The notes under the pieces are model-generated. The model searched no databases. It was not told the DNA's origin and worked only from the letters and a program-made list of their open reading frames with translations. Both the position numbers and the translations under genes were made by a program. A stretch of 21,128 nt of DNA from Octopus sinensis (Eukaryota): NCBI RefSeq assembly GCF_006345805.1, contig NW_021823804.1, positions 1-21,128 of the forward strand. The letters run 5' to 3'. Below, in pieces: positions 1-18,240 of the stretch. Every line of letters begins with the position of its first letter. Positions within the stretch are counted from its first letter, which is position 1.

Positions 1-94
1 CATTCTGCTGGAATGCTAATGTCGGGGAAGAAAGAGGGTATACTGAGTAAGTGAAGGGAATTAAAATGTATCAATCTCACCAAATCCTTAGTAC

Positions 95-330
95 ATGGTT
101 ATGTAGCTAATAGCATCACACAAACACCACACACACACACACACACAACACACACACAACACAAAACCTCTTTTTCTTCTTTCTCCCTCCCTCTCTCTCC
201 TCTTTCTATCACTTTCTTTCCCTCTCTCATTTACACTCTTCCACTATCAACGCCCATCTTTGACTGCTGACGCAAACTTTTCATATCGGATTCATATAAT
301 GAGAAATAAAGACGCCAATCTATATTTACA
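95..330 (+). repeat. Unclassified short module A: GGTTATGTAxCTxATxGCATCACAC-(CA)n-CT-rich-ACTCTTCCACT...ACTGCTGA...AAACTTTTCA
   Basis: Visible homology to 5265-5575 along its length, and to 6696-6860 and 7505-7620 in the 5' part. Confidence 0.65.
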
Positions 331-679
331 CACACACACACCACATTATATATATATATTGCATAATTGTGTGCTACTTCAATGAAAAAATGTATGGTAA
401 ATAAACAAATGACGCAATATATATATATGCGCACATATATATATATAGATATATATAAACATTCACTACCTCTTACGAACAGAGACTAACAGCACTTTAT
501 TGGTAAGTTACGATTTTCATTATATTATATCGGCCTCTATTGGCCATTGTCCAGTCTCCTCAGCGGCATTAGGATGGGATGGATAAAAAGGTTCACCACC
601 CTTAAGACCTCATAAATTTGGGTCCCAAATTACCTAAAATGTTTTTTTATGCTTTTATTTTTACTTCAGTAATTTTCAG

Positions 680-893
680 TTAACCCATTAGCATTGGCAC
701 TGGCCACGTCGGGCCCAAATATTCTTCCTGTTTTCTGTGGAAACTGAACACATTAGCCCTTTCACAACAACCATGCAAAGTTATTCTAAATGTAAGCAAT
801 CACATAATCAAAATCTCAAAGCTAGAAGATAACGTATGTTTAATTTTAAACGATGTGAATAAATAAGTAATTCATCTGAATGTTGAAGGAGTA
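680..893. mobile_element. Non-autonomous MITE with TTAA end (piggyBac-like), degraded
   Basis: Begins TTAA-CCCATTAGCATT and ends CTGAATGTTGAAGGAGTA, a decayed inverted repeat of CCCTTTAGCATT/AATGCTAAAGGG. Length ~215 bp. Resembles an abundant octopus MITE from recall, not from a search. Confidence 0.7.
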
Positions 894-946
894 TCCCTTC
901 TAGCTGGTACAATAATGAAACAGCAATTCCATCTCAAATTACGTGG

Positions 947-1206
947 GGTATTTTTAAGGACACTTTTCAGGTACGAAGGAAGTGGTTAAGAATGTTAGTA
1001 GTACAAAAAATCGGGTCGGTATTTTTCTTAGTATTTGACTTTTGTTAATTATTGTTTGAAGCCGAGAAGGGTCAAATGAGAGTAGAGACGGTTGAAAAGC
1101 AAAAATTTGAAGAAATTTGTTTTGTGTGTTGGTGAGATTTGGGAGGCTGAGAGGGGGAGGAAAAATCAATTGATCATAATACTTGGAATAAATTTGGGAT
1201 GCGTGT
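947..1206 (-). mobile_element. Probable Penelope-like element fragment (RT-EN linker region)
   Basis: The minus strand reads ...PNLFQVL*... at one end and ...EKCP*K at the other, similar to the linker and CPL motif preceding Penelope GIY-YIG domains. Same strand and C/A-rich composition as the fragment at 1720-2400. Highly degraded. Confidence 0.45.
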
Positions 1207-1424
1207 TATATATATTTATATTTCTGTGGGTATCTATATATATATGCTGACTACTTTATGTTTTTATTACTGTGTATTAATGTAGGAGTTTATATGTATA
1301 TATATTGTGCGTATATGTGTGTGTTGCATGTATATATGTAAGAGCGTGTATGTAATATTATGTATTTGCAAATGTGATTATATATATAATGTAAATGCAA
1401 GTTGGATAATTCAGATTTATTGCA

Positions 1425-1466
1425 TATGCTTATATATATATATAAATAAATAAATAAATATATATA

Positions 1467-1509
<43 letters not shown>

Positions 1510-1630
1510 ATATACATATATATTTATTTATATATATAATAAATTATATATATATATATAATATATATATTAACATACATAGATATATGCGTACATAGGC
1601 ACACACACACACACACACACACATATATAA
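1425..1630. repeat. (AT)n and (CA)n microsatellite block
   Basis: Direct reading. Homologous blocks at ~10660-10812 and ~20045-20160 differ in length. Confidence 0.95.
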
Positions 1631-1719
1631 TCTATTTGGAATGTGTCCACTTGTCGATTGTCAGGTTGACTCTTGTTTACATTACAGCTTTGATGGGCCC
1701 CGGGGCTTGCTATATGATT

Positions 1720-2400
1720 ATTTAGAATTAGGGAAGTGCATGAATGTCGGGCAGTATTTATGCTTACGATAAAAAATAACGTCAGAGATTTTAACAGTGA
1801 GGAGTTGTGGAGGCGAAGAATAGTTAATGACCCTTTTATACATAACATACATTTACCTATATTTGTGTTGTAGAGGGGAGCTTCACATCCTCTGGAACAC
1901 GATAGAGCGTATTGGACATTGTTTTGAGTTAAGGTTGTATATGTGTGTCGCTAAAGATTGAAGTAGTTTAGATTTGGGATTAATGAAAAAATACATATGA
2001 GCACGACAACGGCATTCGAAATCCTCAGTGCCATAAATATACACCCTTGCTTGGTGGGTGCATGGGGTAATCACGTGGCACTTATAGATTACGTTTTTGA
2101 GGAGACAGGTGTCTGCATACCGTATATTTCAGAAGCGCGACAGTTGCAAGTGGTTGTGGTTTACTATTAGTAATGTTGATGTTGGTTGGTTTGTTGTTAG
2201 TGGGGAGAATCTAAATTAGGATTTATATTAGTATCGGATTGGGAGTTTGTAATGGAACTAATATCTATCGTCTAGTAGATAGGGTTGTAGAATGTTGGCT
2301 TAAGTTTAGTATTATACAATTGAAGTGGCTTATTAAGGTTTGTATTATTGTATTGTGATGGTTAGCTTGGGATTTTGGGGACAATTTTGGTTTTTATCCA
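1720..2400 (-). mobile_element. Penelope-like retroelement 3' part: GIY-YIG endonuclease pseudogene
   Basis: Minus-strand translation across frameshifts: TCNCRASE / DTCLLKNVIYKCHVITPCTHQARVYIYGTEDFECRCRAH...SLATHIYNL / GKCMLCIK. This has the Cys motif, VIY...YIxG core, RxxxH and CxLC pattern of Penelope endonucleases. It overlaps the ORFs at 1883-2074 and 1570-1848. Confidence 0.85.
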
Positions 2401-2778
2401 CACATAAACCCACCGGTGTTTTATAAAGACTTATGGAACCACGTGACCGCTGCTAGCTTTGGTGTTGTTGATGTGTATGTATTTTCAAAATGTTTTATTC
2501 TTCAACTTTGAGATGTATTGTTGATTTTTTTTATTTTATCTTACTATAATCAGCAACAAACACCTTCCGTCAATATTAAATTCTTTATTGGATAAAAAAA
2601 AAACATTATCAAAACATGAAGTTAAAACAAAACAAATGTGCTTTGTTTTCTTCCAGGCACAAATGTCCTGTAGCAATAGTCTTTCATCGACCGACCTTTC
2701 CTCCAAAAAAATCAGTGGAATCATTCGATCTCCATACACAAATTATTTTCCTCCTGGAACTATAAAAAAAGTTACACA

Positions 2779-2858
2779 CATTAGGCGCACCTTTCTCTAA
2801 GCGGCACACTAAATTTCCCAGGTAAAAAATAGCGGCTTATACACCGGAAAATACGGTG
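2779..2858. mobile_element. Terminal fragment of a Tc2/pogo-like (TcMar) DNA transposon or MITE
   Basis: CATTAGGCGCACC...TAAGCGGCAC...GCGGCTTATACACCGGAAAATACGG-TG matches the typical ...TTATAxxCCGGAAAATACGG-TA end with a subterminal repeat. No clear partner TIR; the element may extend left to ~2400. Confidence 0.6.
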
Positions 2859-3696
2859 TTTCTTTTTTTGTCATATTCATATCGACTTTCACTCCATAAA
2901 CGTTACACAAACACTTGACTGCGATGCCTGAATGTCTACATTAAAGCATTTTAAGCTAAATTCTCTGCCTGATCTACAGGCTCATTAGGCCCCCAGAATA
3001 TCTCGGTATCGAACGTATTCAACACCCAAGGATACAACACACAGGATACCAGTCTGTCGCAATGTTAACCCCTGGTTAATGCTGGTACTTTCAGATGAGA
3101 GCACTGGAAGTGTCTTTCTCGTGGACACAACTTACCGAACAATAATCCATACGCCTATGTGTGTGTGTGTGCGCTTATGTACATATCCGTGCGTATGTGG
3201 GTGTATTTTTGTATGCATGTACACACACACACATAATCTTTTATTCTTTTAATCTTTTGCTATTTAAGGTGAATTTCAAAGTCGTTATGCCAATCACATA
3301 ATCCCCTTCCGACATAGGACAAAAGTAAAGCTACGAAACTGGCTAAGTTTGGAGAAAACGAAACACCACATGTGACTGGATGGGAAGTAATTGAGAATCC
3401 ATAACTTATGTGAATGGATCGAATAAATATAAACATTATTTAGCTGAAAGAGTGCATATCCTGTTCAGATCTAAGATGCTTAATTCTCTATTGGACTCTA
3501 GGTCGGGAATTTTCAGTCGTTGTCAAGTATAAATATATTTTGAAGATCTGGAAAATTCCGTCTATTCTTGATTAGATTTTTGATATTTTATTAGCCTTAT
3601 AATTCAAGGTCTAACAAGGAGAACACTTAAATGCTGTTTTTACTTTTCCCTTTCCCATTTTCGTTTTTGTGCTTTCGCTTTCCGATTTCCGGAACA

Positions 3697-4776
3697 CTGG
3701 GCATGCTGTGGAAGACATGAACTGGGGCTGCGGCATCTCCAAACATTCTGCGTAAATGGTGAACAGGTGTGGTCATCGTTTGTCAACAGGCTTTTCCACA
3801 ACTCATCTCCTTGAGTAAGCTGCAGTCCTGGGTCAAGAAGAGACCAAGGAAGAGTTACTGGCATCTGGAATGTTGCTAGGCACTCACTGTCCTCTAGCAG
3901 GTGGGCAATGCGATCAGTAGAAAATCCACTCTGAAGTTCTATGGAGGGTTAGTGGAGGGATAGTGCGATGAAGCACTTGGAGAGACGTTAGGCGTGGACA
4001 AAATTGAACTAATCAGTCTGTTGAGAAGGACTTTCAAGACGGGGATGATGGATAACTTCTAGAATTCCCTTGTTTTGCAGTGTTATCGGGGGGCACTGCC
4101 GGTTCGAGATAAACTCTACAAGGACGGAAGTGCTGTCTGACCGACCTACCCGACATGTGCGCAGAGCTATGAAATCATTCTGCACGCACTCGTCCAGTGT
4201 CCTTGCATTACTGACATGGAGTTATGTTGAACAGCTGTTATCACGTGTAGGGGTTCTATCTATCGGCCGAGTCCGTAGTGAAGATCGCTCAGCCGCTTTC
4301 CATTAGTCCGGAAGGTCAGGCAATTTACTTATGTCTAATAGCAGTAGCGAAAGAGGCTGTATTGTGGATCAGGTTAAAAGGACTAAAGGCAGAGACTTTT
4401 CTCTACGGCCAATCACTCGTCAACTTTTTCAAATTTCCTTGGAAAGGAAGATGAGGGTGCAGAGTGAAGTGCTGCCTCCCAGAACTTTGCCAAAAGGTGG
4501 ATGAACAGAGAAAATGGTACGTGTGAGTGGACCACTCTAATAACACGCCTTTGTGCTAGTGAATTTTTAAAGTGAGGAGAGTGCTCTTCCCAGATGCTCT
4601 CGAAGCGTCGAGTGGTTCAGGATTGGGGTGTGGGGTACCTGAGCCAACTCCAGGGGATTCCCTGCACCTATTACGAACTTTCATTGTTATATTCTTTTGT
4701 CGGATATCATTGTTATTCTTTTAACTTTGTACTCGTTGTCTCTGTGTTAAATCCCCACTGTCCATGTCTACTGTGT
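3697..4776 (+). mobile_element. Tx1/L1-clade LINE 3' fragment (post-RT region, zf-RVT-type C terminus and 3' UTR), pseudogenised
   Basis: Reads QAFPQLISLSKLQSWVKKRP...QCYRGALPVRDKLYKDGSAV* / PTCAQSYEIILHALVQCP, the CCHC-type C-terminal motif of L1/Tx1 ORF2. Several stops and frameshifts. GC content is above the flanks. Confidence 0.85.
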
Positions 4777-5008
4777 CCTGTTTCTTTACTACCCCAAGGG
4801 GGCTAAACACAGAGAGGACAAACAAGACAGACAAACGGATTAATTCGATTATATCGATCACAGTGCGTAACTGGTACTTCTTTAATCGACCCGAAAGGAT
4901 GAAAGGCAAAGTCGAACTCGGGGGAATTTGAACTCAGAAGGTAACGGCAGAGAAATACCGCTTAGCATTCGCCGACGACTACTGAAGATTCTGCCAGCTC
5001 TCACCGCA
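4777..5008 (-). mobile_element. tRNA-derived SINE, family 1
   Basis: Minus strand has an A-box-like AGCTGGCAGAA (4989-4999), a B box GAGTTCAAATTCC (4923-4935) and a central GCCTTTCATCCTTTCGGGTCGAT...AAGTACCAG domain. Resembles a known octopus SINE from recall. Confidence 0.85.
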
Positions 5009-5046
5009 TTTTCTACTGTATCTTTCTCCCATATGCCGGCCCTATG

Positions 5047-5194
5047 GCAATAATAATAATACTAATAATAATTATTATTATTATTATATTATTATTATTA
5101 ATTAGTATTATTATCATTATCATTATTATATTAATATATTATTATTTTCATTATTATTATTAATTATTATTATTATTATTATTTACTATTATTA

Positions 5195-5233
<39 letters not shown>
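5047..5233. repeat. (AAT)n/(ATT)n trinucleotide microsatellite
   Basis: Direct reading. Expanded to ~14176-14478 in copy 2. Confidence 0.95.
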
Positions 5234-5234
<1 letters not shown>

Positions 5235-5264
5235 GGAATTTTTTTCAGGCTAAACTTTTCACTC

Positions 5265-5571
5265 ACTTCTCAGTAAAATTGTCATTTAATGCAATCGTTA
5301 ATGTGATATTCCCTCCAGTTTCATATTAAAGAAAAGATTAGGCAGGGTTGTGTATCTAATTGCATCACACACACAGACACACACACACACACAGACCACA
5401 CACCACACTCACAATTGTACACATCAACTCTCCTCCTCTTCTTTCCCCTCTCTCTCTTTTATCACTCCCTCTCCCCACTCTCTCATTTTAACTCTTCCAC
5501 TTCCCCGCCAATCGTCATAAACTGCTGATTGAAACTTTTCAAATCGAAATATATAATTAGAAATACAGATG

Positions 5572-5575
<4 letters not shown>
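5265..5575 (+). repeat. Unclassified short module B
   Basis: AAATT(AT)GTCATTTAAT...CAGTTTxATATTAAAGAAA...GTGTATCTAATTGCATCACAC-(CA)n, followed by a CT-rich tail homologous to module A. Confidence 0.65.
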
Positions 5576-5613
<38 letters not shown>

Positions 5614-5617
5614 CTTA

Positions 5618-6702
5618 GAATGTGGAATGTTCGTATCAACTAACACAGACTACGGCATCATAATACAGGCCACGAAGCGATGATAGGAGCAAAGCTTATC
5701 CAAGTGAAGTCGGTGGGCCTGCAAATCGGCAGGTGGAGAGGCAGACCAATACCAACCGACATTTTGTAGGGCCCTAGACGGAATGACAGGTTAAACTGCT
5801 TGGATTCTGGTTTGCTCTTGACCTCGGGGTGGACAACAACGGCTGGGAGGTGACGAACAGGATAGTCGATCTCACCCAGAAGTTGGCAGAGAGGAAGCTG
5901 TTCGTGAAGGGTCGAGTCGAAGTGGCGAATGCGTACATCCCTTCCGTCATCTATGACTTTCTGAATGTAGTCCCATGCCCGATAAAGTTAGAGCGTTTGT
6001 TATTCCGCTTTCTAAAGAAGGGATGTGTTCCGCGCATCAGACGGTCCATCTGCTGTCAACAACCTCTCAGTAGAGTACTGGACATGTCGTTGCTAATGAT
6101 TCGCAGACTTACGCTTAGACTGCGACATCTCCTTCGTTTCTTTAGTGGTGAGAATAGGGGATAGACTGTTTGTGAAGCGGGCACTTTCCGCAGCTCGTCT
6201 CACTGATGAAGCTACAGTACTGAGTCAAGCGTTGGCCAAGAAAGGGCGCTTGGCACCTGGAGTCTCGGCAAGCTTTCACAGCTTTCTGCCAGTCGGCAAC
6301 GCGGGCGTTGATAGTTCCAACATGGATTTCTATAGGGAATTAGGAGAGGGGAAAGAACAACGAAGAAATCGAGGTAAATTCTGGGCGTAGGTTGAGGGAA
6401 TCAACTAACTGGTCTTTAACTTCCAGGAATCCCTGGCCTGGCGGTGCTACCGGGGAGCTCTGCCGATTCAAGACAAGCTCTACAGATACGAAAGTGTTGT
6501 CGGACGGATATGTTTGGGTTGTGCGCAGGGCGATGAAGTAGTCCTGCATGCACTCATCCGTCCAGTTTACGAGCCGAGTTCATTGTAAAGATCGCCCCGC
6601 CACCTTCTTTAGGCCGGGAAGGAAAAGCAGTTTCTTCTGCCCGGTGGCTAAACAAGTAGTGTGGTGGACGAGACTGAAAACATTGAAGACTAAACCTTCT
6701 TC
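5618..6702 (+). mobile_element. Second Tx1/L1-clade LINE fragment (end of RT domain to zf-RVT), pseudogenised
   Basis: Reads IGAKLIQVKSVGLQIGRWRG...NRIVDLTQKLAERKLFVKGRVEVANAYIPSVIY...KLERLLFRFLKKG...RLRHL...FQESLAWRCYRGALPIQDKL...CLGCAQGDEVVLHAL. Covers the ORFs at 5829-6164 and 6145-6390. Contains frameshifts and internal deletions. Confidence 0.88.
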
Positions 6703-6860
6703 ACAATGAAATTATGTCATTTAATATTATCATTTCATATTATCATAAATATTCACTTCAGTTTTATATTAAAGAAACTCATAGGTATGGTTATGTATCT
6801 CATTGCATCACACACAAACACACACAGACACACAGACACACGCACACAGACACACACACA
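6696..6860 (+). repeat. Unclassified short module C
   Basis: CTTCTTCACAATGAAATTATGTCATTTAAT...CTTCAGTTTTATATTAAAGAAACTCATAGGTATGGTTATGTATCTCATTGCATCACAC, near-match to module B, especially the copy 2 version at ~14505-14625. Confidence 0.7.
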
Positions 6861-7077
6861 GATACTGGAAGACAATTAGTTTTTTTTCAATTTCCTTTTT
6901 TATCTTTCACTTTTTGCAGAAGGCATCAAGAATACTGGAGACTTTCTCAAATACAAATACGTTAAACAGTTTAGTGGCCCCTGCATGTTTTCCTCTCCCT
7001 CTTCCCCTCACTCCTATGAAAATAGGACATCAAACTATTGAATGTTTGGGTAGAGATGAGCTCTCACTCTCTCTTTT

Positions 7078-7490
7078 TTACTCTTTTACTTGTTTCAGCG
7101 ATTTTAATGTGGCCGTGATGGAGCACCGCCTTTTGTCGAGTAAATCGACCCAAGGACTTATTCATGTAAGCCTAGTACTTCTTCTATCGGTCTCTTTTGC
7201 CGAACCGCTAACTTACAGGGACATAAACACACCAGCATCGGTTGTCAAGCGATGTTGGGGGGAAGGCGGGACTAACACTGACACACAAACACACACATAG
7301 AAATATATATATATGCATATATACAACGGGCTTCTTTCAGTTTCCGTCTACTAAATCCACTCACAAGGCTTTAGTCGGCCCGAGGCTATAGTAGAAGACG
7401 CTCGCCCAAAGTGCCACGCAGTGGGATTGAACCCGGAACAATGTGGTTGGTAAGCAAGCTACTTACCACACAGCCACTCCCGCGCCTATA
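7078..7490 (-). mobile_element. tRNA-derived SINE, family 2 (CORE-like central motif)
   Basis: Minus strand has an A box GTGGCTGTGTGGTAA (7463-7477) and a B box GGGTTCAATCCC (7423-7434), then GCACTTTGGGCGAGCG (CCTTGGGCAAG-like), an internal (AT)/(GT) tract and an A-rich GTAAAAGAGTAAAAAA tail. Resembles a very abundant octopus SINE from recall. Confidence 0.9.
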
Positions 7491-8260
7491 GAAGTTTGGA
7501 ATATAATTGTGTCAATTATTATAATCGTTATATATCTCAGTGCATCACACACACACAGCACAAACACAACACACACACACACACACACCACACACCACAC
7601 ACACATACACACACACACACCAGGACGTATACATTTGAAGACCCTTCACACCACACAAAATCCTCGCCTGTCATCCTCTTTCGTATAAAATATTGCTACT
7701 TTGATAACGAAAATTCTTTTCCCATAACTTTAAAGCTGCTAAAACCTATAATTCCTCTTCAGAATTGTTATAATTTCTCTATCATATACTTTATTTCACA
7801 AACGTAATTTTCAGAAACGAACTATTGTTAAATGAATTTGTATCGTTTTTTCCATGTCAATCATTATATATACCATTTAAATTATTATCGTTATTGATAA
7901 CTTGATTTTCTGAAGTGACACTAACGTTAAATGAATCTATCGTCTGCTCAGAGGAAATATTTGGCTGCTATTTCTAGCACATCCAGCTTAAGCTTCAGAG
8001 ATTCTTCAGGAAGAGAATGGTGGATGACAATGTGAACACTGGAGGGTCTAACAAAGAATTTAGAAATGTACTTCATTTTAATGTTGGCTTTTGACATTGT
8101 ATTTGGGAAGAGATCGATGATCAATAGTTATCGAGCAAAAGTGAGATGATTCTACCAGATGAAAAATCTATCGTCTGATCGTATAACAATATTTTAATCA
8201 TTTCCGGTAATGTCGCCTTTAAACGATTTTATGTTCCATAGCTACTAAATTTCTTTGACG

Positions 8261-8301
<41 letters not shown>

Positions 8302-8650
8302 CTCTATAACACGCACGATCAAACACACAGACACAAATTTCACACCTTACTACTAAGTGTATTTGACGTTTGTCTACCTCACACACACAATAACACATAC
8401 ACACACAGACACAAATGCAGTTATATACACACTCATACACATACACAATCACTCGCAATCATTAACACAAGCACACACCCGCACATCATCATACATACAG
8501 CATACATATTGTCCCCTACCTATTTTTACTACTCCCTCCTTCTACCCATTTCTGAAGTCATTGCTTATAACGGATTATTTTAAAAAAACACTCATTGTCA
8601 CTGTGGTCACCATGTAGGCAATCTTCAAAAATTTTGTTCGTCTTGTGGCT

Positions 8651-8763
8651 GAAAGAGGCTCTTAATCTTTCCTGATGAGAAGATGGCATAATGCACCATT
8701 TATTCCTTCGGAATTAAAATTATGCCGTCTTCGAAACATGTGTCGAGAGTAAAAACCTCGTTC
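8651..8763 (+). ncRNA. Type I hammerhead ribozyme
   Basis: Core CTGATGA at 8672-8678. Stem II is GAAGATGGCATAAT (8679-8692) with ATTATGCCGTCTTC (8719-8732): 14 bp, one U-G, first pair G10.1-C11.1. GAAA at 8733-8736. Stem III is AC-atgt-GT. Cleavage triplet GTC at 8742-8744. Stem I proximal is CTTTC (8667-8671)/GAGAG (8745-8749); distal is GAAAGAGG (8651-8658)/CCTCGTTC (8756-8763) with one mismatch. Confidence 0.9.
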
Positions 8764-8927
8764 GACTCCATTCTTTCATTTATTCATATAAATAACACAA
8801 ATTTGCACACAAGAACCCGGAGTTTCTACCCTTGACAGGTCACTTCAACTGTGTTTTCCGACGTGAATTTGCTACCCAGGTATCGGTTAAACGAATTTTC
8901 CATGCTAGAATAATTCATTCACCTACT

Positions 8928-8930
<3 letters not shown>

Positions 8931-8987
<57 letters not shown>
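8931..8987. repeat. (AT)n microsatellite
   Basis: Direct reading. Bounds the ribozyme-containing segment on its 3' side. Confidence 0.95.
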
Positions 8988-8988
<1 letters not shown>

Positions 8989-9356
8989 AATACATGAATA
9001 TATACGTTTATATAATTCTGATAACTGTGTGTGCGTGTTTTTAATATAAAATTATACATATACACACACACAACACACACACACACAGATATCACAATTT
9101 GTAAAATAGTACTTAGATTATTTCAAGTTAATTTCAGTTACGCGGATGTAAACAGTCTCATGCAGTTACGCATATACACACACACACATACATACACACA
9201 TGCAACACCAGACAGTGACATAATTTTCATTTCTCCATTTCTGCTGGAATGCTAATGTCGCGAAAGAAGTAGGGTATGCTGAGGAAGTGAAGGGAATTAA
9301 AATGTATCAATCTCACCAAATCCTTAGTACATGGTTATGTAGCTAATAACATCACA

Positions 9357-9391
<35 letters not shown>

Positions 9392-9555
9392 CCCTCTTTT
9401 TCTTCTTTCTCCCTCCCTCTCTCTCTCTCTTTCTATCACTTTCTTTCCCCTCTCTCATTTACACTCTTCCACTATCAACGCCCATCTTTGACTGCTGACG
9501 CAAACTTTTCATATCGGATTCATATAATGAGAAATAAAGACGCCAATCTATATTT

Positions 9556-9603
<48 letters not shown>

Positions 9604-9925
9604 GCATAATTGTGTGCTACTTCAATGAAAAAATGTATGGTAAATAAACAAATGACGCAATATATATATATGCGCACATATATATATATATATAGATATA
9701 TATAAACATTCACTACCTCTTACGAACAGAGACTAACAGCACTTTATTGGTAAGTTACGATTTTCATTATATTATATCGGCCTTCTATTGGCCATTGTCC
9801 AGTCTCCTCAACGGCATTAAGGATGGGATAAAAAGGTTCTCCACCCTTAAGACTTCATAAATTTGTGTCCCCAAATTACCTAAAATGTTTTTTTATGCTT
9901 TTATTTTTACTTCAGTAATTTTCAG

Positions 9926-10139
9926 TTAACCCATTAGCATTGGCACTGGCCACGTCGGGCCCAAATATTCTTCCTGTTTTCTGTGGAAACTGAACAGATC
10001 AGCCTTTTCACAACCACCATGCAAAGTTATTCTAAAAGTAAGCAATCACATAATCAAAATCTCAAAGCTAGAAGATAACGTATGTTTAATTTTAAACGAT
10101 GTGAATAAATAAGTAATTCATCTGAATGTTGAAGGAGTA
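9926..10139. mobile_element. TTAA MITE, copy 2
   Basis: Paralog of 680-893. Confidence 0.7.
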
Positions 10140-10193
10140 TCCCCTTCTAGCTGGTACAATAATGAAACAGCAATTCCATCTCAAATTACGTGG

Positions 10194-10452
10194 GGTATTT
10201 TTTAAGAACACATTTCAGGTACGAGGGAGTGGTTAAGAAGGTTAGTAGTACAAAAAATCGGGTCGGTATTTTTCTTAGTATTTGACTTTTGTTAATTATT
10301 GTTTGAAGCCGAGAAGGGTCAAATGAGAGTAGAGACGGTTGAAAAGCAAAAATTTGAAGAAATTTGTGATGTGTGTTGGAGAGATTTAGGAGGCTGAGAG
10401 GAGGATGAAAAATAGATTGATCATAATACTTGGAATAAATTTGGGATGCGTG
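10194..10452 (-). mobile_element. Probable Penelope-like linker fragment, copy 2
   Basis: Paralog of 947-1206. Confidence 0.45.
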
Positions 10453-10689
10453 TTATATATATTTATATTTCTGTAGGTATCTATATATATATGCTGACTA
10501 CTTAATGTTTTTAATACTGTGTATTAATGTAGGAGTTTATATGTATATATATTGTGCGTATATGTGTGTGTGTTTGCATGTATGTATGTAAGAGCTTGTA
10601 TGTATATATTATGTATTTGTAAATGCAATTTTGGATATTTCATATGTATTGCATATGCTCATATATATATATATATATCTGTATATATA

Positions 10690-10763
<74 letters not shown>

Positions 10764-10889
10764 TGTATATATGTTATACATACATATATGTATACATAGA
10801 CACACACACACATATTTGCTATTTGGAATGTGTTCACTTGTCGATTGTCAGGTTGACACTTGTTTTACATTACAGCTTTTTTTATTTGG

Positions 10890-11563
10890 AATTAGGGAAG
10901 TGCATGAATGTCGGGCAGTATTTATGATTACGATAAAAAATAACGTCAGAGAATTTAATAGTGAGGAGTTGTGGAGGCGAATAATAGTTAATCACCATTT
11001 TATACATAACATACATTCACCTATATTTGTGTTTTAGAGGGGAGCTTCACATACCATGGACCACGATAGAGCGTGTTGGACATTGTTTTGAATTGAGGTT
11101 GTATATGTGTGTTGCTAAAGATTGAAGTAGTTTAGATTCGGGATTAGTGAAAGAATACATATGAGCACGACAACGACATTGAAAATCCTCAGTGCCATTA
11201 ATATACACCCTTGCCTGGTGGGTGCATGGGGTAATGACGTGGCACTTAAAGATTACGCTTTTGAGGAGACAGGTGTCTGCATACCATATATTTCAGAAGC
11301 GCGACAGTTGCAAGTGGTTGGGGTTTACTAGTAGTAATGTTGATGTTGGTTGGTTTGTTGTTAGTGGGGAGAATCTAAATTAGGATTTATATTAGTATCG
11401 GATTGAGAGGTTGTAATGGAACTAATATTTGTCGTCTCGTAGACAGGGTTGTAGAATGTTGGCTTAAGATTAGTATTATACAATTGAGGTGGCTTATTAA
11501 TGTTTGTATTATTGTATTGTGAAGTTTAGCTTGGGATTTTGGGGAAAATTTTGGTTTTTATCC
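10890..11563 (-). mobile_element. Penelope-like GIY-YIG fragment, copy 2
   Basis: Paralog of 1720-2400 with the same motifs. Confidence 0.85.
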
Positions 11564-11941
11564 ACACATAAAGCCTACCGGTGTTTTATAAAGACTTATG
11601 GAACCACGTGACCGCTGCTAGCTTTGTTGTTGTTGATGTGTATGTATTTTCAAAATGTTTTATTCTTCAACTTTGAGATGTATTGTTGATTTTTTTTATT
11701 TTATCTTACTATAATCAGCAACAAACACCTTCCGTCAATATTAAGATTTTTATTGGATAAAAAAAACATTATCAAAACATGAAGTTAAAACAAAACAAAT
11801 GTGCTTTGTTTTCTTCCAGGCACCAATGTTTTGTAGCAATAGTCTTTCATCGACCGACCTTTCCTCCAAAAAAATCAGTGGAATCATTCGATCTCCATAC
11901 ACAAATTATTTTCCTCCTGGAACTATAAAAAAAGTTACACA

Positions 11942-12021
11942 CATTAGGCGCACCTTTCTCTAAGCGGCACACTAAATTTACCAGGTAAAATATAGCGGCT
12001 TATACACCGGAAAATACGGTG
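11942..12021. mobile_element. Tc2/pogo-like terminal fragment, copy 2
   Basis: Paralog of 2779-2858; ends TTATACACCGGAAAATACGG-TG. Confidence 0.6.
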
Positions 12022-12856
12022 TTTATTTTTTTGTCATATTCATATCGACTTTTCCTCCATAAACGTTACACAAACACTTGACTGCGCATGCCTGAATGTC
12101 TACATTAAAGCATTTTCTAAGCTAAATTCTCTGCCTGATCTACAGGCTCATTAGGCCCCCAGTATATCTCGGTATCGAACGTATTTCAACACACCGGATA
12201 CCAGTCTGTCGCAATGTTAACCCCTGGTTAATGCTGGTACTTTTCAGATGAGAGTACTGGAAGTGTCTTTCTCGTGGACACAACTTACCGAAACAATAAT
12301 CCATACGCCTATATGTGTGTGTGTGCGCGCTTATGTACATATCCGTGCGTATGTGGGTGTATTTTTGTATGCATGTACACGCACACACACACAATCTTTT
12401 ATTCTTTTATTCTTTTGCTTATTTAAAGGTGAATTTTAAAGTCGTTATGCCAATCACATAATCCCCTTCCGACATAGGCCAACAGTAAAGCTACGAAACT
12501 GGCTAAGTTTGGAAGAAAACGAAACACCACATGTGACTGGATGGGAAGTAATTGAGAATCCATAACTTATGTGAATGGATCGAATAAATATAAACATTGT
12601 TTAGCTGAAAGAGTGCATATCCTGTTCAGATCTAAGATGCTTAATCCTCTATTGGACTCTAGGTCGGGAATTTTCAGTCGTTGTCAAGTATAAATATATT
12701 TGAAGAACTGAAAAATTCCGTCTATTCTTGATTAGATTTTTGATATTTTATTAGCCTATAATTCAAGGTCTAACAACGAGAACTGTTAAATGCTGTTTTT
12801 ACTTTTCCCTTTTCAAATTTTCGTTTTTGTGCTTTCGCTTTCCGATTTCCGGAACA

Positions 12857-13899
12857 CTGGGCATGCCGTGGAAGACATGCACTGGGGCTGCGGCACCTCC
12901 AAACATTCTGCGTAAATGGTGAACAGGTGTGGTCATCGTTTGTCAAACAGGCTTTTCCACATCTCATCTCCTTGAGTAAGCTGCAGTCGTGGGTCGAGAA
13001 GAGACCGAGGATGGGTTACTGGCATCTGGAATGTTGCTAGGCACTCACTGTCCTCTAGCAGGTGGGCAATGCGATCAGTAGAAAATCCACTCTGAAGTTC
13101 TATGGAGGGTTAGTGGAGGGAAAGTGCGAGGAAGCACTTGGAGAGACGCTAGGCGTTGACAAAATTGAACTAACCAGTCTGTTGAGGAGGACTTTCAAGA
13201 CGGGGACGATGGATAACTTCTAGAAGTCCCTTGTTATGCAGTGCTGTCGGGGGGCACTGACGGTTCGAATAAACTCTACAAGCACGGAAGTTCTGTCTGA
13301 CCGACCTACCCGACATGTGCGCAGAGCTATGAAATCATTCTGCACGCACTCGTCCAGTGTCCTGCATTACTGAAATGTGGAGTTATGTTGAACAGCTGTT
13401 ATCACGTGTACGGTGGTTCTATCTATCGGCCGAGTCCGTAGTGAAGATCGATCATCCACTTTCAATCAGTCCGGAGGGCAGGCAATTTACTTATGTCTAA
13501 TAGCAAGAAGCGAAAGAGGCTGTGTTGTGGACCAGGTTAAAAGGACTAAAGGCTGAGACTTTTCTCTACGGCCAATCACTCGTCAACTTTTTCAAATTTT
13601 CTTTGGAAAGGAAGATGAGGGTGGATGAATAGCGAAAATGGTACGTGTGAGTGGACTTACTCTAATAACACGCCTTTGAGCTAGTGAATTTGAAAGAAAG
13701 GAGAGTGTTCTTCCCAGATGCTCTCGAAGCGTCGAGTGGTTCAGGATTGGGGTGGGGGTACCTGAGCCAACTCCAGGGGATTACCTGCACCTATTACGAA
13801 CTTTCATTGTTATATTCTTTTGTCGGATATCATTGTTATTCTTTTAACTGTGTACTCATTTTCTCTGCGTTAAATCCCCACTGTCCATGTCTACTGTGT
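12857..13899 (+). mobile_element. Tx1/L1-clade LINE 3' fragment, copy 2
   Basis: Paralog of 3697-4776 with a 40-bp deletion near 13624. Confidence 0.85.
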
Positions 13900-14135
13900 C
13901 CTGTTTCTTTACTACCCACAAGGGGCTAAACACAGAAAAGACAAACAAGGACAGACAAACGGATTAAGTCAATTATATCGACCACAGTGCGTAGCTGGTA
14001 CTTCTTTAATCGACCCCGAAAGGATGAAAGGAAATGTCGACCTCGGATGAATTTGAACTCAGAACGTAACGGCAGAAGAAACACCGCTTAGCATTTCGCC
14101 CTACGTACTGAAGATTCTGCCAGCTCACACCGCAT
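13900..14135 (-). mobile_element. tRNA-derived SINE family 1, copy 2
   Basis: Paralog of 4777-5008; B box retained. Confidence 0.85.
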
Positions 14136-14175
14136 TTTCTACTGTATCTTCTCCCATATGGCGGCGCTATTGGCA

Positions 14176-14245
14176 AATAATAATAATAATAATAATGATA
14201 ATAATAGTAACAACACTAGTAAAGAATAATTATAATAATAATAAT

Positions 14246-14288
<43 letters not shown>

Positions 14289-14388
14289 TAACAATAATTA
14301 CTATTATTATTATTATTATTATTATTATATTATTATCATTATTATTTTTATTATTATTATCATTATTATTATAATAATAATAATAATA

Positions 14389-14427
<39 letters not shown>

Positions 14428-14478
14428 CATTATTATTATTATTATTGTTATTATTATTATTATTATAATTATTATTAT
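14176..14478. repeat. (AAT)n/(ATT)n microsatellite, copy 2
   Basis: Direct reading. Source of the poly-N/poly-I/poly-L ORF at 14230-14430. Confidence 0.95.
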
Positions 14479-14809
14479 TGGAATTTTTTTCGGGCTAAAC
14501 TTTTCACTTCTTTACAATAAAATTATGTCATTTAATGCAATAGTTAATTTGATTGATTTCCCTTCAGTTTTATATTAAAGAAAGCATAGGCAGGGCTGTG
14601 TATCCAATTGCATCACACACACAGACACACACACCACACTCACATCGTACGCATCAACTCTCCTACTCTTCTTTCGCCTCTCTCTCTTCTATCACTCCCT
14701 CTCCCCACTCTCTCATTTTAACTCTTCCACTTCCACCGCCAATCATCATAAACTGCTGACTGAAACTTTTCAAATCGAATAGTATAATTAGAAACACAGA
14801 TGCCATATA

Positions 14810-14858
<49 letters not shown>

Positions 14859-14900
14859 CATATACATATATATATATATATTTATATATATGTGTTTTAG

Positions 14901-15981
14901 GATGTGGAATATTCGTATCAGTAACACGGACTGTGTCATCATAATACTGTCCACGAAGCGTTGATAGGAGCAAAGCTACCAAGAGAAGTCGGTGGGCCTG
15001 CAAATTGGCAGTTGGAGAGGCAGACCCATACAAACCGACAGTTTGTAGGGCGCTAGAGGGAAAGGCAGGTTAAAACTGCTTGGGTCTGGTTGCTCTTGAC
15101 CTCGGGGTGGACAACAACGTGTGGAAGGTGACGAACAGGATAGTCGATCTCACCCAGAAGTTGGCAGAGAGGAAGCTGTTCGTGAAGGGTCGAGTCGAAG
15201 TGGCGAATGCGTACATCCCTTCCGTCATCTATGACTTTCTGAATGATGTAGCCATGCCCGATAAAGTTAGAGCGTTTGTTATTCCGCTTTCTAAAGAAGG
15301 GACGTGTTCCGCTCAACAGACGGTCCATCTGCTGTAAGCTACCTCTCAGTGGAGTACTGGACATGTCGTTGCTAATGATTCGCAGACATACGCTGAGACT
15401 GCGACATCTCCTGCGTTTCTTTAACGGTGAGCATGGGGGATTGACTGTTTGTGAAGCGGGTCTTTCCGCAGCTCGTCTCACTGAAGAAGCTACAGTACTG
15501 AGTCAAGCGTTGGCCAAGAAAGGGCGCTTGGCACCTGGAGTCTCGGCAAGCTTTCACAGCTTTCTGCCAGTCGGGCAACGCGGGCGTTGATAGTTCCACT
15601 ATAGATTTCTATAGGGAATTAGGAGAGGGGAAAGAACAACGAAGAAATCGAGGTAAATTCTGGGCGTATGTTGAGGGAATCAACTAACTGGTCTTTAACT
15701 TCCAGGAATCCCTGGCCTGGTGGTGCTACCGGGGAGCTCTGCCGATTCAAGACAAGCTCTACAGATACGAAAGTGTTGTCGGACGGATATGTTTGGGTTG
15801 TGCGCAGGGCGATGAAGTAGTCCTGCATGCACTCATCTGTCCAGTTTACGAGCCGAGTTCATTGTAAAGATCGCCCCGCCACCTTCTTTAGGCCGGGAAG
15901 GAAAAGCAGTTTCTTCTGCCCGGTGGCTAAAGAAGTAGAGTGGTGGACGAGACTGAAAACATTGAAGACTAAACCTTCTTC
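14901..15981 (+). mobile_element. Second Tx1/L1-clade LINE fragment, copy 2
   Basis: Paralog of 5618-6702. Covers the ORFs at 15080-15337 and 15276-15590. Confidence 0.88.
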
Positions 15982-16359
15982 ACAATGAAATTATGTCATT
16001 TAATATTATCATTTCATATTATCATAAATATTCACTTCAGTTTTATATTAAAGAAACTCATAGATATGGTTAAGTATCTCATTGCATCACACACAAACAC
16101 ACACAGACACACACACACACGCACACAGACACACACACAGATACTGGAAGACAATTAGTTTTTTTTCAATTTCCTTTTTTATCTTTCACTTTTTGCAGAA
16201 GGCATCAAGAATACTGGAGACTTTCTCAGATACAAATACGTTAAATAGTTTAGTGGCCCCTGCATGTTTTCCTCTCCCTCTTCCCCTCACTCCTATGAAA
16301 ATAGGACATCAAACTATTGAATGTTTGGGTACAGATGAGCTCTCTCTCTCTCTCTCTTT

Positions 16360-16768
16360 TACTCTTTTACTTGTTCAGTGATTTTAATGTGGCCGTGAGA
16401 GCACCGCCGCTTTGTCGAGTAAATCGACCCAAGGACTTATTCATGTAGCCTAGTACTTCTTCTATCGGTCTCTTTTGCCGAACCGCTAACTTACAGGGAC
16501 ATAAACACACCAGCATCGGTTGTCAAGCGATGTTGGGGGGAAGGCGGGACTAACACTGACACACAAACACACACATAGAAATATATATATATGCATATAT
16601 ACAACGGGCTTCTTTCAGTTTCCGTCTACTAAATCCACTCACAAGAATTTAGTCGGCCCGAGGCTATAGTAGAAGACGCTCGCCCAAAGTGCCACGCAGT
16701 GGGATTGAACCCGGAACAATGTGGTTGGTAAGCAAGCTGCTTACCACACAGCCACTCCCGCGCCTATA
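16360..16768 (-). mobile_element. tRNA-derived SINE family 2, copy 2
   Basis: Paralog of 7078-7490; A and B boxes intact. Confidence 0.9.
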
Positions 16769-16839
16769 GAAGTTTGGAATATAATTGTGTCCATTATTAT
16801 AATCGTTATATATCTCAGTGCATCACACACACACAGGCA

Positions 16840-16880
<41 letters not shown>

Positions 16881-17532
16881 ACACACACACCAGGACATAT
16901 ACAATTGAAGACCCTTCACACCACAAAATCCTCGCCTGTCATCCTTCTTTCGTATAAAATATTGCTACTTTGATAACGAAAATCTTTTCCCATAAACTTT
17001 TAAAGCTGCTAAACCTTTAATTCCTCTTCAGAATTGTTATAATTTCTCTATCATATACTTATTTCACAAACATATTTTCTGAAACGAACTATTGTTAATG
17101 AATTTGTATCGTTTGCTTCCATGTCAATCATTATATATACCATTTAAATCATTATCGTTATTGATAACTTGATTTTCTGAAGTGACACTATCGTTAATGA
17201 ATCTATCGTCTGCTCAGAGGAAATATTTGGCTGCTATTTCTAGCACACATCCAGCTTAAGCTTCAGAGATTCTTCAGGAAGAGAATGGTGGAAGACAATG
17301 TGAACACTGGAGGGTCTAACAAAGAATTTAGAAATGTACTTCATTTTAATGTTGGCTTTTGACATTGTATTTGGGAAGAGATCGATGATCAATAGTTATC
17401 GAGCAAAAGTGAGATGATTCTACCAGATGAAAAATCTATCGTCTGATCGTATAACAATATTTTATCATTTCCGGTTAATGTCGCCTTTAAACGATTTTAT
17501 GTTCCATAGCTACTAAATTTCTTTGACGTATG

Positions 17533-17568
<36 letters not shown>

Positions 17569-17915
17569 CTCTATAACACGCACGATCAACACACAGACAC
17601 AAATTTCACACCTACTACTAAGTGTATTTTCACGTTTGTCTACCTCACACACACAATAACACATACACACACAGACACAAATGCAGTTATATACACACTC
17701 ATACACATACACAATCACTCGCAATCATAAACACAGCACACACCCGCACATCATCATACATACAGCATACATATTGTCCCCTACCTATTTTTACTACTCC
17801 CTCCTTCTACCCATTTCTGAAGTCATTGCTTATAACGGATTATTTTAAAAAAACACTCATTGTCACTGTGGTCACCATGTAGGCAATCATCAAAAATTTT
17901 GTTCGTCTTGTGGCT

Positions 17916-18029
17916 GAAAGAGGCTCTTAATCTTTCCTGATGAGAAGATGGCATAATGCCACCATTTATACCTTCGGAATTAAAATTATGCCGTCTTCGA
18001 AACATGTGTCGAGAGTAAAAACCTCGTTC
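17916..18029 (+). ncRNA. Type I hammerhead ribozyme, copy 2
   Basis: CTGATGA at 17937-17943, GAAA at 17999-18002, GTC at 18008-18010. Core and all stems are identical to copy 1; the only differences (one insertion, one substitution) fall in loop II. Confidence 0.9.
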
Positions 18030-18199
18030 GACTCCATTCTTCATTTATTCATATAAATAACACAAATTTGCACACAAGAAGAACCCGGAGTTTCTACCCT
18101 TGACAGGTCACTTCAACTGTGGTTTTCCGACGTGAATTGCTACCCAGGTATCGGTTAAACGAATTTTCCATGCTAGAATAATTTCATTCACCTACTAAT

Positions 18200-18240
<41 letters not shown>

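What the first reader, a model, noticed from the sequence alone, without database searches (positions are those of the whole stretch)
8651..8763. Intact type I hammerhead ribozyme, one per repeat unit
Seen: every conserved core position is present (C3-U-G-A-U-G-A9, G12-A-A-A15.1, U16.1, C17), with the G10.1-C11.1 pair, a 14-bp stem II, and a stem I split by an internal loop. Loop II is large (26 nt) with its own sub-hairpin TTCC-TTC-GGAA. The two copies differ only in loop II. Established: type I hammerheads occur in metazoan Penelope-like elements, retrozymes and some satellite DNAs, and stem I/loop II contacts accelerate cleavage. The motif class is known; its placement as the sole intact element of a 9.3 kb macro-repeat is the unusual part. 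Predicted cuts are after 8744 and after 18010.
Basis: partly seen in the sequence, partly recalled or inferred. Interest (0 to 1): 0.85.

Follow-up and report, generated by a model that had tools for sequence, protein, structure and literature searches.

The report
Solo hammerhead ribozyme motif, duplicated passively
The window holds two near-identical copies of a well-formed type I hammerhead self-cleaving RNA motif of the kind animal retrotransposons scatter through genomes, and it occurs once per 9.3 kb unit only because the whole junk-rich block was recently duplicated, so it is real but ordinary.

Summary
At 8651-8763 and 17916-18029 (+ strand) every conserved hammerhead core base is present. 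Helix I has 5 bp, an internal loop and a distal stem. Helix II has 14 bp with a 26/27-nt loop. C17 lies at 8744/18010. A relaxed descriptor finds only these two sites in the window. In 300 Mb of composition-matched random sequence nothing had a helix II of 6 bp or more, so chance is excluded.

Rfam does not call it. Hammerhead_1 scores 18 bits against a gathering score of 34, and the hit appears only in a 201-nt search. Helix III has only 2 bp plus an AUGU loop, and the segment ACAUGUGU is self-complementary. That is the weak, dimer-type helix III of metazoan retroelement hammerheads. The monomer fold is 3 kcal/mol above the minimum free energy (MFE).

The 9.3 kb repeat is a tandem duplication, 88-95% identical, made of microsatellites and decayed LINE fragments. 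The two hammerheads are as similar as their flanks (98%), so their intactness shows no selection. I found no reverse transcriptase (RT) or GIY-YIG remnant, no short tandem retrozyme array and no relatives in the searchable collections.

Best reading: a solo relic of a Penelope-like-element or retrozyme hammerhead, copied passively. It is a new member of a known kind and of low interest.

The parts
8651..8763 (+). Hammerhead motif, copy A (whole type I motif, open at helix I)
   Evidence: Sequence; descriptor hit; Hammerhead_1 full-length alignment at 18.0 bits; centroid fold shows helices I and II
8651..8671 (+). Helix I 5' strand: distal 8651-8653 and 8655-8658, internal loop 8659-8666, proximal 8667-8671
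   Evidence: Proximal pair probability is only about 0.11 because a local hairpin, 8651-8656 with 8666-8671, competes.
8672..8678 (+). Core C3-U4-G5-A6-U7-G8-A9
8679..8732 (+). Helix II (14 bp: 8679-8692 with 8719-8732, including G10.1-C11.1) and 26-nt loop II (8693-8718) with sub-hairpin 8702-8706/8710-8714
   Evidence: The sub-hairpin is lost in copy B.
8733..8744 (+). G12-A13-A14-A15.1, minimal helix III (A8736-U8743, C8737-G8742, loop AUGU) and C17 at 8744; predicted cut between 8744 and 8745
   Evidence: ACAUGUGU is self-complementary with two G.U pairs, and the dimer cofold forms an extended helix III.
8745..8763 (+). Helix I 3' strand
17916..18029 (+). Hammerhead motif, copy B (core 17937-17943, C17 at 18010); differs from copy A by one inserted C and one T>A, both in loop II
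8480..8930 (+). About 450-nt island of complex sequence that carries copy A, bounded by CA-rich repeats upstream and (TA)n downstream. Its only other copy in the window is 17745-18199.
   Evidence: Local blastn; alignment; fold z-score -1.58, not rod-like
3..9238 (.). Macro-repeat unit 1 (arbitrary phase)
   Evidence: Self-blast offsets 9236-9279; 88-95% identity to unit 2; repeat families D7-D16
9239..18642 (.). Macro-repeat unit 2
   Evidence: 92.6% identity to partial unit 3
18643..21128 (.). Macro-repeat unit 3, partial; it ends before the position where a hammerhead would lie

Best explanation
This is a genuine, sequence-intact type I hammerhead ribozyme motif of the metazoan retroelement-associated kind: the hammerheads carried in the pseudo-LTRs of Penelope-like elements and in their non-autonomous derivatives, the non-LTR retrozymes.

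It survives as a single (solo) motif inside a ~450-nt island between microsatellites. It was then copied passively when a ~9.27 kb block of decayed LINE fragments and simple repeats was duplicated in tandem.

What is shown:
- The motif exists and is not a chance match.
- Helix III is weak and self-complementary.
- The duplication is young.
- No coding remnant and no short tandem array is nearby.

What is inferred:
- If the + strand is transcribed, the RNA can cleave itself after C17 (8744/18010) by the usual 2'-O-transesterification, leaving 2',3'-cyclic phosphate and 5'-OH ends.
- Cleavage should be poor as a monomer. Helix III has only 2 bp, a local hairpin competes with helix I, and the 14-bp helix II precludes the canonical loop 1-loop 2 contact.
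- Efficient cleavage would need pairing of two copies through ACAUGUGU (an 8-bp intermolecular helix III) or a protein helper, as reported for such hammerheads.
- It has no role in the macro-repeat or for the host.
For: Motif and non-randomness:
- The core and helices are read directly.
- The only two descriptor hits in 42 kb of both strands are the two copies.
- The random rate is 0.10 per Mb per strand for the relaxed motif, with none at helix II >=6 bp in 300 Mb.
- The pattern occurs twice against 0.01 expected.
- Hammerhead_1 aligns over all 45 model positions with every core base matched. The score is lowered by a 50-nt insert where the model expects 10.

Dimer-type helix III:
- The monomer hammerhead fold is -27.5 kcal/mol against an MFE of -30.4. 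Helix III contributes +0.6.
- The cofold of two copies is -71.0 against 2 x -30.4, with an extended helix III. The helix III duplex alone is -10 kcal/mol.

Literature match:
- Metazoan type I hammerheads have a helix III of 1-2 bp with a small palindromic loop and act as dimers.
- PLE hammerheads have an enlarged helix II, a conserved G10.1-C11.1 pair and low activity in vitro.
- Most of them occur as single motifs attributed to truncated PLEs (PMC4209133).
- A 2-bp helix III with a tetraloop is typical of invertebrates (PMC7229834).
- Retrozyme monomers are dispersed along chromosomes (bioRxiv 10.64898/2026.07.22.740005).
- PLEs are often 5'-truncated and insert in microsatellites (PMC8557442).

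Passive duplication:
- Units are 92.6%, 88% and 95.2% identical by segment.
- The 600 nt around the motif are 98% identical.
- The motif has 2 differences in 113 nt, where about 5 are expected at the unit-wide rate. That is not a significant deficit.
- One of the two changes breaks the loop II sub-hairpin.
Against: - No Rfam hit reaches the gathering score.
- No relatives were found, so there is no covariation support. The metagenome, virus and prokaryote-genome scans gave only chance matches. A protein-proxy search over the motif found nothing.
- The link to a PLE or retrozyme rests on resemblance only. There is no RT or GIY-YIG remnant in six frames of 7000-10500 and no ORF longer than 171 aa anywhere.
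- The unpaired base between A9 and G10.1 that is typical of PLE min-hammerheads is absent.
- A 14-bp helix II with a 26-nt loop is longer than the 6-8 bp described for PLE hammerheads.
- Both differences between the copies fall in loop II. By chance that has p about 0.05, which could hint at mild constraint on the stems.
- Transcription and cleavage are untested.
Confidence: 0.7

Rival explanations
1. The hammerhead is the working part of the macro-repeat. Read-through transcripts of the array are cut once per unit into ~9.27 kb RNAs with 5'-OH and 2',3'-cyclic phosphate ends. These could be circularised and reverse-transcribed, making a giant retrozyme-like or ribozyme-processed macrosatellite.
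For: There is exactly one motif per complete unit, in the same orientation, 9265 nt apart. The self-complementary helix III would let neighbouring copies in one long transcript pair. Tandem head-to-tail arrays are how retrozymes and PLEs are organised (PMC7229834, PMC4209133).
Against: One motif per unit is automatic for any tandem duplication. The unit is about 10-30 times longer than any retrozyme (51-972 bp in 10.64898/2026.07.22.740005; ~170-400 nt in PMC7229834). It consists of decayed LINE fragments and microsatellites with no ORF. Conservation of the motif is no better than that of its flanks. Two sites 9.3 kb apart are poorly placed to dimerise co-transcriptionally.
Confidence: 0.04
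2. It is a domesticated hammerhead with a host function, for example inside an intron or UTR where it controls an mRNA, like the conserved amniote intronic hammerheads.
For: The core is fully intact in both copies, and the only differences fall in loop II.
Against: No gene, exon-like ORF or conserved coding sequence lies anywhere in the 21 kb. The surroundings are microsatellites and transposon debris. The locus is duplicated as junk. No homologous locus was recovered.
Confidence: 0.05
3. It belongs to a currently active element: a live non-LTR retrozyme array, or an autonomous Penelope-like element whose body lies nearby.
For: The motif is intact. The helix III style matches active invertebrate retrozyme hammerheads (PMC7229834).
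Against: No short tandem repeat carries it. The island 8480-8930 has no other copy in the window except its macro-repeat twin. There is no RT or GIY-YIG signal within +/-1.7 kb and no long ORF in the window. The island does not fold into the highly self-paired form typical of retrozyme RNAs (z = -1.58).
Confidence: 0.05
4. It is a chance resemblance: an AT-rich inverted repeat that happens to be flanked by CUGAUGA and GAAA.
For: Hammerhead_1 scores only 18 bits against a gathering score of 34, and the hit disappears in a 1.8 kb search. Relaxed hammerhead descriptors give on the order of hundreds of random hits in a Gb-sized genome (0.10 per Mb per strand). The same core pattern gave chance matches in bacterial and metagenome contigs.
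Against: Those chance matches lack helix I or helix II. Here all eleven fixed core bases, G10.1-C11.1, a 5-bp helix I with a distal extension and a 14-bp helix II coincide. No random hit in 300 Mb had a helix II of 6 bp or more. Extrapolating about 0.35-fold per extra pair puts a 14-bp version far below one per Gb genome.
Confidence: 0.02

Closest known systems
Hammerheads in the pseudo-LTRs of Penelope-like elements ('min-HHRs'; Cervera & de la Pena 2014, PMC4209133)
   Same: Type I topology. Canonical CUGAUGA...GAAA core. G10.1-C11.1 pair. Enlarged helix II and a short helix I (5 bp proximal). Tiny helix III with palindromic sequence that allows a dimeric helix III. Mostly found as single dispersed motifs. 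Animal genome rich in microsatellites.
   Different: No unpaired base between A9 and G10.1. Helix II is 14 bp with a 26-nt loop, against 6-8 bp. A real 2-bp helix III with a tetraloop is present. No pseudo-LTR, RT or GIY-YIG sequence is detectable next to it.
Non-LTR retrozymes of metazoans (Cervera & de la Pena 2020, PMC7229834; Li et al. 2026 preprint, 10.64898/2026.07.22.740005)
   Same: [quoted passage not shown] Low GC content. Dispersed monomer derivatives are known.
   Different: Retrozymes are short tandem repeats (about 170-400 nt, up to 972 bp) with one hammerhead each, and they give highly self-paired circular RNAs. Here the hammerheads are 9265 nt apart, there is no short repeat, and the island is not notably self-paired. 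Canonical retrozyme hammerheads have a 4-bp helix II with loop 1-loop 2 contacts.
Satellite and SINE hammerheads of newts (satellite 2), Schistosoma (Sm-alpha) and cave crickets (pDo500). Named from established knowledge and as cited in PMC4209133 and PMC7229834.
   Same: Type I. Weak helix III that works through dimer formation between neighbouring copies. Located in repetitive DNA.
   Different: Those sit in ~150-350 bp tandem or SINE-like units with 4-bp helix II and conserved loop-loop contacts. No tRNA-like or pol III part is present here.
Rfam RF00163 Hammerhead_1
   Same: Full-length alignment to all 45 model positions, with every core base matched.
   Different: 18.0 bits against a gathering score of 34, so by Rfam's own rule it is not a called member. 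The 50-nt helix II/loop II insert is not modelled.

Membership tests
Hammerhead ribozyme, type I | Conserved catalytic core: C3 U4 G5 A6 N7 G8 A9, G12 A13 A14, A15.1-U16.1 pair, H17 at the cleavage site | tested here: met
   8672-8678, 8733-8736, 8743 and 8744, with identical bases in copy B
Hammerhead ribozyme, type I | Three helices around the core with helix I open-ended | tested here: met
   Helix I has 5 bp plus a distal 4+3 bp. Helix II has 14 bp. Helix III has 2 bp with an AUGU loop. Helix III is thermodynamically marginal as a monomer.
Hammerhead ribozyme, type I | Score at or above the Rfam Hammerhead_1 gathering threshold | tested here: not met
   No hit at gathering. 18.0 and 17.9 bits against 34 in 201-nt searches. 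Not listed in an 1801-nt search.
Hammerhead ribozyme, type I | Tertiary contact between loop 1 (or the helix I bulge) and loop 2, which gives fast cleavage at physiological Mg2+ | tested here: inconclusive
   Loop II lies 14 bp from the core and the helix I internal loop 5 bp from it, so the canonical side-by-side contact is not available. An AU-only 5-nt complementarity (8662-8666 with 8713-8717) exists but has no support.
Hammerhead ribozyme, type I | Helices supported by compensatory changes among relatives | not testable with these tools
   Only two copies exist, identical in all stems. No relatives were found in the metagenome, viral or prokaryote collections or by protein proxy. No eukaryotic genome collection is searchable by DNA.
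Hammerhead ribozyme, type I | Site-specific self-cleavage after position 17 | not testable with these tools
   Needs in vitro transcription or RNA end mapping.
Penelope-like element hammerhead (pseudo-LTR motif) | Lies in a direct repeat flanking an RT + GIY-YIG ORF, or in a recognisable truncated copy of one | tested here: not met
   No Pfam RT or GIY-YIG hit in six frames of 7000-10500. No ORF longer than 171 aa in the window. The island has no second copy other than its macro-repeat twin. Decayed remnants could escape detection.
Penelope-like element hammerhead (pseudo-LTR motif) | Minimal or short palindromic helix III that allows a dimeric active form | tested here: met
   ACAUGUGU (8736-8743) self-pairs with 6 Watson-Crick and 2 G.U pairs. 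The dimer cofold is 10 kcal/mol better than two monomers.
Penelope-like element hammerhead (pseudo-LTR motif) | Enlarged helix II with G10.1-C11.1 and an unpaired base between A9 and G10.1 | tested here: inconclusive
   Helix II is enlarged (14 bp) and G10.1-C11.1 is present, but there is no unpaired base after A9.
Non-LTR retrozyme | Short tandem repeats (about 170-1000 bp), each with one type I hammerhead | tested here: not met
   The hammerheads are 9265 nt apart and no short repeat contains them.
Non-LTR retrozyme | Monomer RNA highly self-paired | tested here: not met
   The island 8500-8926 has z = -1.58, and 6 of 100 shuffles fold as well.

The most novel reading that the evidence does not exclude
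The hammerhead is not a relic but defines the unit of a ribozyme-processed macrosatellite. Array transcripts would be cut once every ~9.27 kb, neighbouring or trans copies pairing through the self-complementary helix III, to give unit-length RNAs that could circularise. That would be a retrozyme-like system about 10-30 times larger than any described. It would use a hammerhead variant whose 14-bp helix II and 26-nt loop replace the canonical loop-loop contact.
Probability: 0.04. Interest if true: 0.6.

Novelty: new member of a known kind. Interest (0 to 1): 0.2.

Why it matters
It matters little for biology at large. Thousands of such motifs per genome are already documented in invertebrates, fishes, amphibians and reptiles, mostly as single copies left by Penelope-like elements or retrozymes.

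It has three modest uses:
- It shows that Rfam's Hammerhead_1 threshold misses a motif with a perfect core when helix II carries a long insert.
- It is a natural hammerhead with an unusually long helix II that could be assayed to see how much activity survives without the canonical loop-loop contact.
- It marks the source genome as one that has hosted hammerhead-bearing retroelements.

The macro-repeat is best seen as an ordinary tandem segmental duplication.

Tried and rejected
1. Rfam at gathering thresholds over the whole window gave nothing. Only permissive 201-nt searches show Hammerhead_1.
2. RAGATH-34 was the top permissive hit (25.6 bits against 60.7). I rejected it. In that model CUGAaGA sits in a hairpin loop of a different three-way junction, several aligned pairs are non-canonical, and E = 0.05 holds only for a 402-nt search space. 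No paper mentions the family.
3. Relatives by DNA pattern (CTGATGAG-N30-60-CGAAACATGTGTC). Metagenomes gave 2 hits, viral contigs 0 and prokaryote genomes 1. All lack helix I or helix II and are chance matches.
4. Relatives by protein proxy: the 73-aa ORF across copy B on the minus strand found no candidate.
5. Looking up two window ORFs to fetch more units of the array: neither is on record.
6. Organism identification. A LINE-like fragment hit one unnamed 217-aa protein at 61% identity, on a 722-nt contig of assembly GCA_024449705.1. Two literature searches for the accession found nothing useful. The organism remains unknown. The composition (about 36% GC, dense TA/CA/AAT microsatellites) and the hammerhead type point to an invertebrate animal. 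That is an inference only.
7. Pfam on LINE-like and other ORF fragments, and on all six frames of 7000-10500, gave no RT, GIY-YIG or other credible domain. My first attempt with DNA references failed because of stop codons.
8. tRNA or SINE-like parts: none. The bacterial-type promoter/terminator scan is uninformative for a eukaryote.
9. Rod-like retrozyme fold of the island: not supported.
10. Supplementary sequences of the 2014 PLE-hammerhead paper, to compare with shrimp hammerheads, are not held.

Full report
**What is there**

- The + strand carries CUGAUGA at 8672-8678 (C3-A9).
- G8679 (10.1) pairs with C8732 (11.1) at the base of an uninterrupted 14-bp helix II: 8679-8692 with 8719-8732, one pair being G.U.
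- Helix II is closed by a 26-nt loop (8693-8718).
- GAAA follows at 8733-8736, then C-A-U-G-U-G-U, with U16.1 at 8743 and C17 at 8744.
- Helix I is open-ended, which makes this type I. Five pairs sit next to the core (8667-8671 with 8745-8749). An 8 x 6 nt internal loop follows, and then a distal stem (8655-8658 with 8756-8759, and 8651-8653 with 8761-8763).
- The second copy, 17916-18029, is identical except for one extra C and one T>A, both in loop II.
- The predicted scissile bonds are after 8744 and after 18010.

**Is it more than chance?**

Yes.

- A core-only pattern occurs twice against 0.01 expected in shuffles.
- A hammerhead descriptor I wrote requires the fixed core, helix I >=4 bp, helix II >=4 bp and a U16.1-H17 placed 1-12 nt after A15.1. 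It finds only these two sites on either strand of the window.
- In 300 Mb of first-order Markov sequence with the window's dinucleotide content, it hits 0.10 times per Mb per strand.
- With helices I and II both >=5 bp the rate is 0.0067 per Mb. No random hit had a helix II of 6 bp or more.
- A relaxed hammerhead is therefore expected by chance hundreds of times in a Gb-sized genome. One with a 14-bp helix II is expected far less than once.
- The chance matches to the same core pattern in metagenome and bacterial contigs illustrate the difference. They lack helix I or helix II.

**Covariance models**

- No Rfam family reaches its gathering score in the window.
- When only 201 nt are searched, Hammerhead_1 aligns over its full 45 positions with every core base matched. 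It scores 18.0 bits for copy A and 17.9 for copy B, against a gathering score of 34 (E about 0.07). The model has to skip a 50-nt insert in helix II.
- In an 1801-nt search the hit is no longer listed at E<=5.
- The covariance model alone would therefore not establish the motif.
- The slightly better sub-threshold hit to RAGATH-34 (25.6 bits against 60.7) is a coincidence of a long hairpin plus CUGA.GA. In that model the heptamer lies in a hairpin loop of a different junction.

*Helix III.*
- It is minimal: A15.1-U16.1 and C15.2-G16.2 closed by AUGU.
- With ViennaRNA the full hammerhead fold is -27.5 kcal/mol against an MFE of -30.4.
- Helix III costs +0.6 kcal/mol and has a pair probability of about 0.01.
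- The proximal helix I has probability 0.11, because the two strands of helix I can each form a local hairpin.
- The eight bases between A14 and C17, ACAUGUGU, are self-complementary (six Watson-Crick and two G.U pairs).
- A cofold of two copies forms that extended helix III. It is 10 kcal/mol better than two monomers.

This is the architecture described for metazoan type I hammerheads. Cervera and de la Pena (PMC4209133) report a helix III of 1-2 bp with a small palindromic loop, and activity as dimers. For the Penelope-like-element variants they report an enlarged helix II, a conserved G10.1-C11.1 pair, low activity in vitro, and occurrence mostly as single motifs ascribed to truncated elements. 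A 2-bp helix III with a tetraloop is called typical of invertebrate hammerheads in PMC7229834. A Penelope-like-element hammerhead of Anolis cleaved only when the element's protein was added (PMC11167929).

*Helix II.* The canonical loop 1-loop 2 contact requires a helix II of about 4 bp. Here loop II is 14 bp from the core and the helix I internal loop is 5 bp from it.

*Loop II sub-hairpin.* The AUUCC/GGAAU sub-hairpin is disrupted by the T>A change in copy B and is no longer predicted there. It is unlikely to matter.

**The macro-repeat**

- Self-comparison shows a tandem array with a period of 9236-9384 nt and 2.3 units in the window.
- Units 1 and 2 are 92.6%, 88% and 95.2% identical by segment. 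Units 2 and 3 are 92.6% identical. Most length differences fall in microsatellites.
- The unit has no ORF longer than 171 aa.
- It contains dense TA, CA and AAT microsatellites and two LINE-like RT C-terminal fragments on the + strand. One of these is 61% identical to an unnamed 217-aa protein from assembly GCA_024449705.1.
- It also contains a ~90-nt dispersed repeat that ends in (CA)n.
- The hammerheads are 9265 nt apart. The 600 nt around them are 98% identical.
- At the unit-wide rate for that segment (103 mismatches and 59 gap openings in 3596 columns) about five differences are expected in 113 nt, and two are seen. That is not a significant deficit.
- The chance that 13 core bases escape change at this divergence is above one half.
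- 'One intact hammerhead per unit' is therefore what passive duplication predicts. It carries no evidence of selection.
- Both changes falling in loop II has p about 0.05. I treat that as a weak hint at most.

**What element did it come from?**

- The motif sits in a ~450-nt island of complex sequence (8480-8930) between CA-rich repeats and a (TA)n tract.
- The island has no other copy in the window except its macro-repeat twin.
- Six-frame Pfam scans of 7000-10500 show no reverse transcriptase or GIY-YIG endonuclease.
- There is no tRNA-like part.
- The island does not fold into a notably self-paired RNA (z = -1.58).
- There is no short tandem repeat of the retrozyme kind.
- Penelope-like elements are often heavily 5'-truncated and prefer microsatellite targets (PMC8557442). 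Retrozyme monomers are dispersed along chromosomes (10.64898/2026.07.22.740005).
- A truncated or solo copy is therefore the natural reading. It rests on resemblance, not on demonstrated homology.
- I could not reach the source genome or any eukaryotic DNA collection. Searches of metagenome, viral and prokaryote collections and a protein-proxy search gave no relatives. Covariation could not be tested.

**Mechanism, with its status**

Shown:
- a sequence-intact type I hammerhead core with helices I and II;
- a marginal, self-complementary helix III;
- recent passive duplication;
- no coding partner nearby.

Inferred:
- If the + strand is transcribed, the RNA cleaves after C17 by in-line attack of the 2'-OH, giving 2',3'-cyclic phosphate and 5'-OH ends.
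- Monomer cleavage should be slow. Efficient cleavage would need two copies paired through helix III, or a protein chaperone.
- With copies 9.3 kb apart this is unlikely to happen often, so the motif is most probably a silent or weakly active relic.

**Comparison and novelty**

- By function and form it works like the hammerheads of Penelope-like elements, retrozymes and amphibian, schistosome and cricket satellites.
- As to membership, the hammerhead core and helix criteria are met.
- Rfam's score criterion is not met.
- The criteria for a pseudo-LTR location or for a retrozyme array were tested and not met in this window.
- Cleavage and covariation could not be tested.
- The 14-bp helix II with a 26-nt loop and the lack of an unpaired base after A9 set it apart from the published consensus forms, but not from the kind.
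- I rate it a new member of a known kind and of low interest.
- The most novel reading not excluded is a ribozyme-processed 9.3 kb macrosatellite. I give it about 4%.

Noticed in passing
window 5306-5396, 6749-6839, 9293-9383, 14554-14644, 16028-16118: A ~90-nt dispersed repeat (62-82% identical) that runs into a (CA)n tract (family D17). It looks like the 3' end of a SINE or LINE with a microsatellite tail, and it occurs three times per macro-repeat unit.
   Followed up: no
window ~3584-4700, 5787-6600 (+), with unit-2 copies at ~12755-13550 and 15074-15860: Two decayed LINE-like RT C-terminal fragments per unit, about 65% identical to each other at the DNA level. The fragment 5787-6161 is 61% identical in protein to an unnamed 217-aa product on a 722-nt contig of GCA_024449705.1. 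No Pfam domain was detected.
   Followed up: partly
window 14176-14479 versus 5049-5235: An (AAT)n/(ATT)n palindromic microsatellite with ~150-nt arms (I1). It is expanded in unit 2 relative to unit 1 and accounts for part of the difference in unit length.
   Followed up: no
window 8639-8763 and 17904-18029: A sub-threshold full-length alignment to Rfam RAGATH-34 (25.6 and 25.2 bits, gathering score 60.7), which outscores Hammerhead_1. I judged it a coincidence of the long hairpin, CUGA.GA and the A-rich tail. No literature on that family was found.
   Followed up: partly
window 8255-9100, 9324-9600: Many sub-threshold microRNA-precursor hits (mir-297, mir-466, mir-4536 and others) fall on TA/CA microsatellites. 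These are low-complexity artefacts.
   Followed up: no
window 8662-8666 and 8713-8717: The helix I internal loop (UUAAU) is complementary to part of loop II (AUUAA). A kissing contact could in principle replace the canonical loop-loop interaction. It is AU-only and 5 nt long, in AT-rich sequence, and nothing supports it.
   Followed up: no
window 8552-8627: An imperfect ~15-bp inverted repeat lies just upstream of the hammerhead (UGAAG..AUUGCUUAUA paired with UGUAGGCAAUCUUCA). It is predicted as a hairpin in the fold of the island. Its significance is unknown.
   Followed up: no
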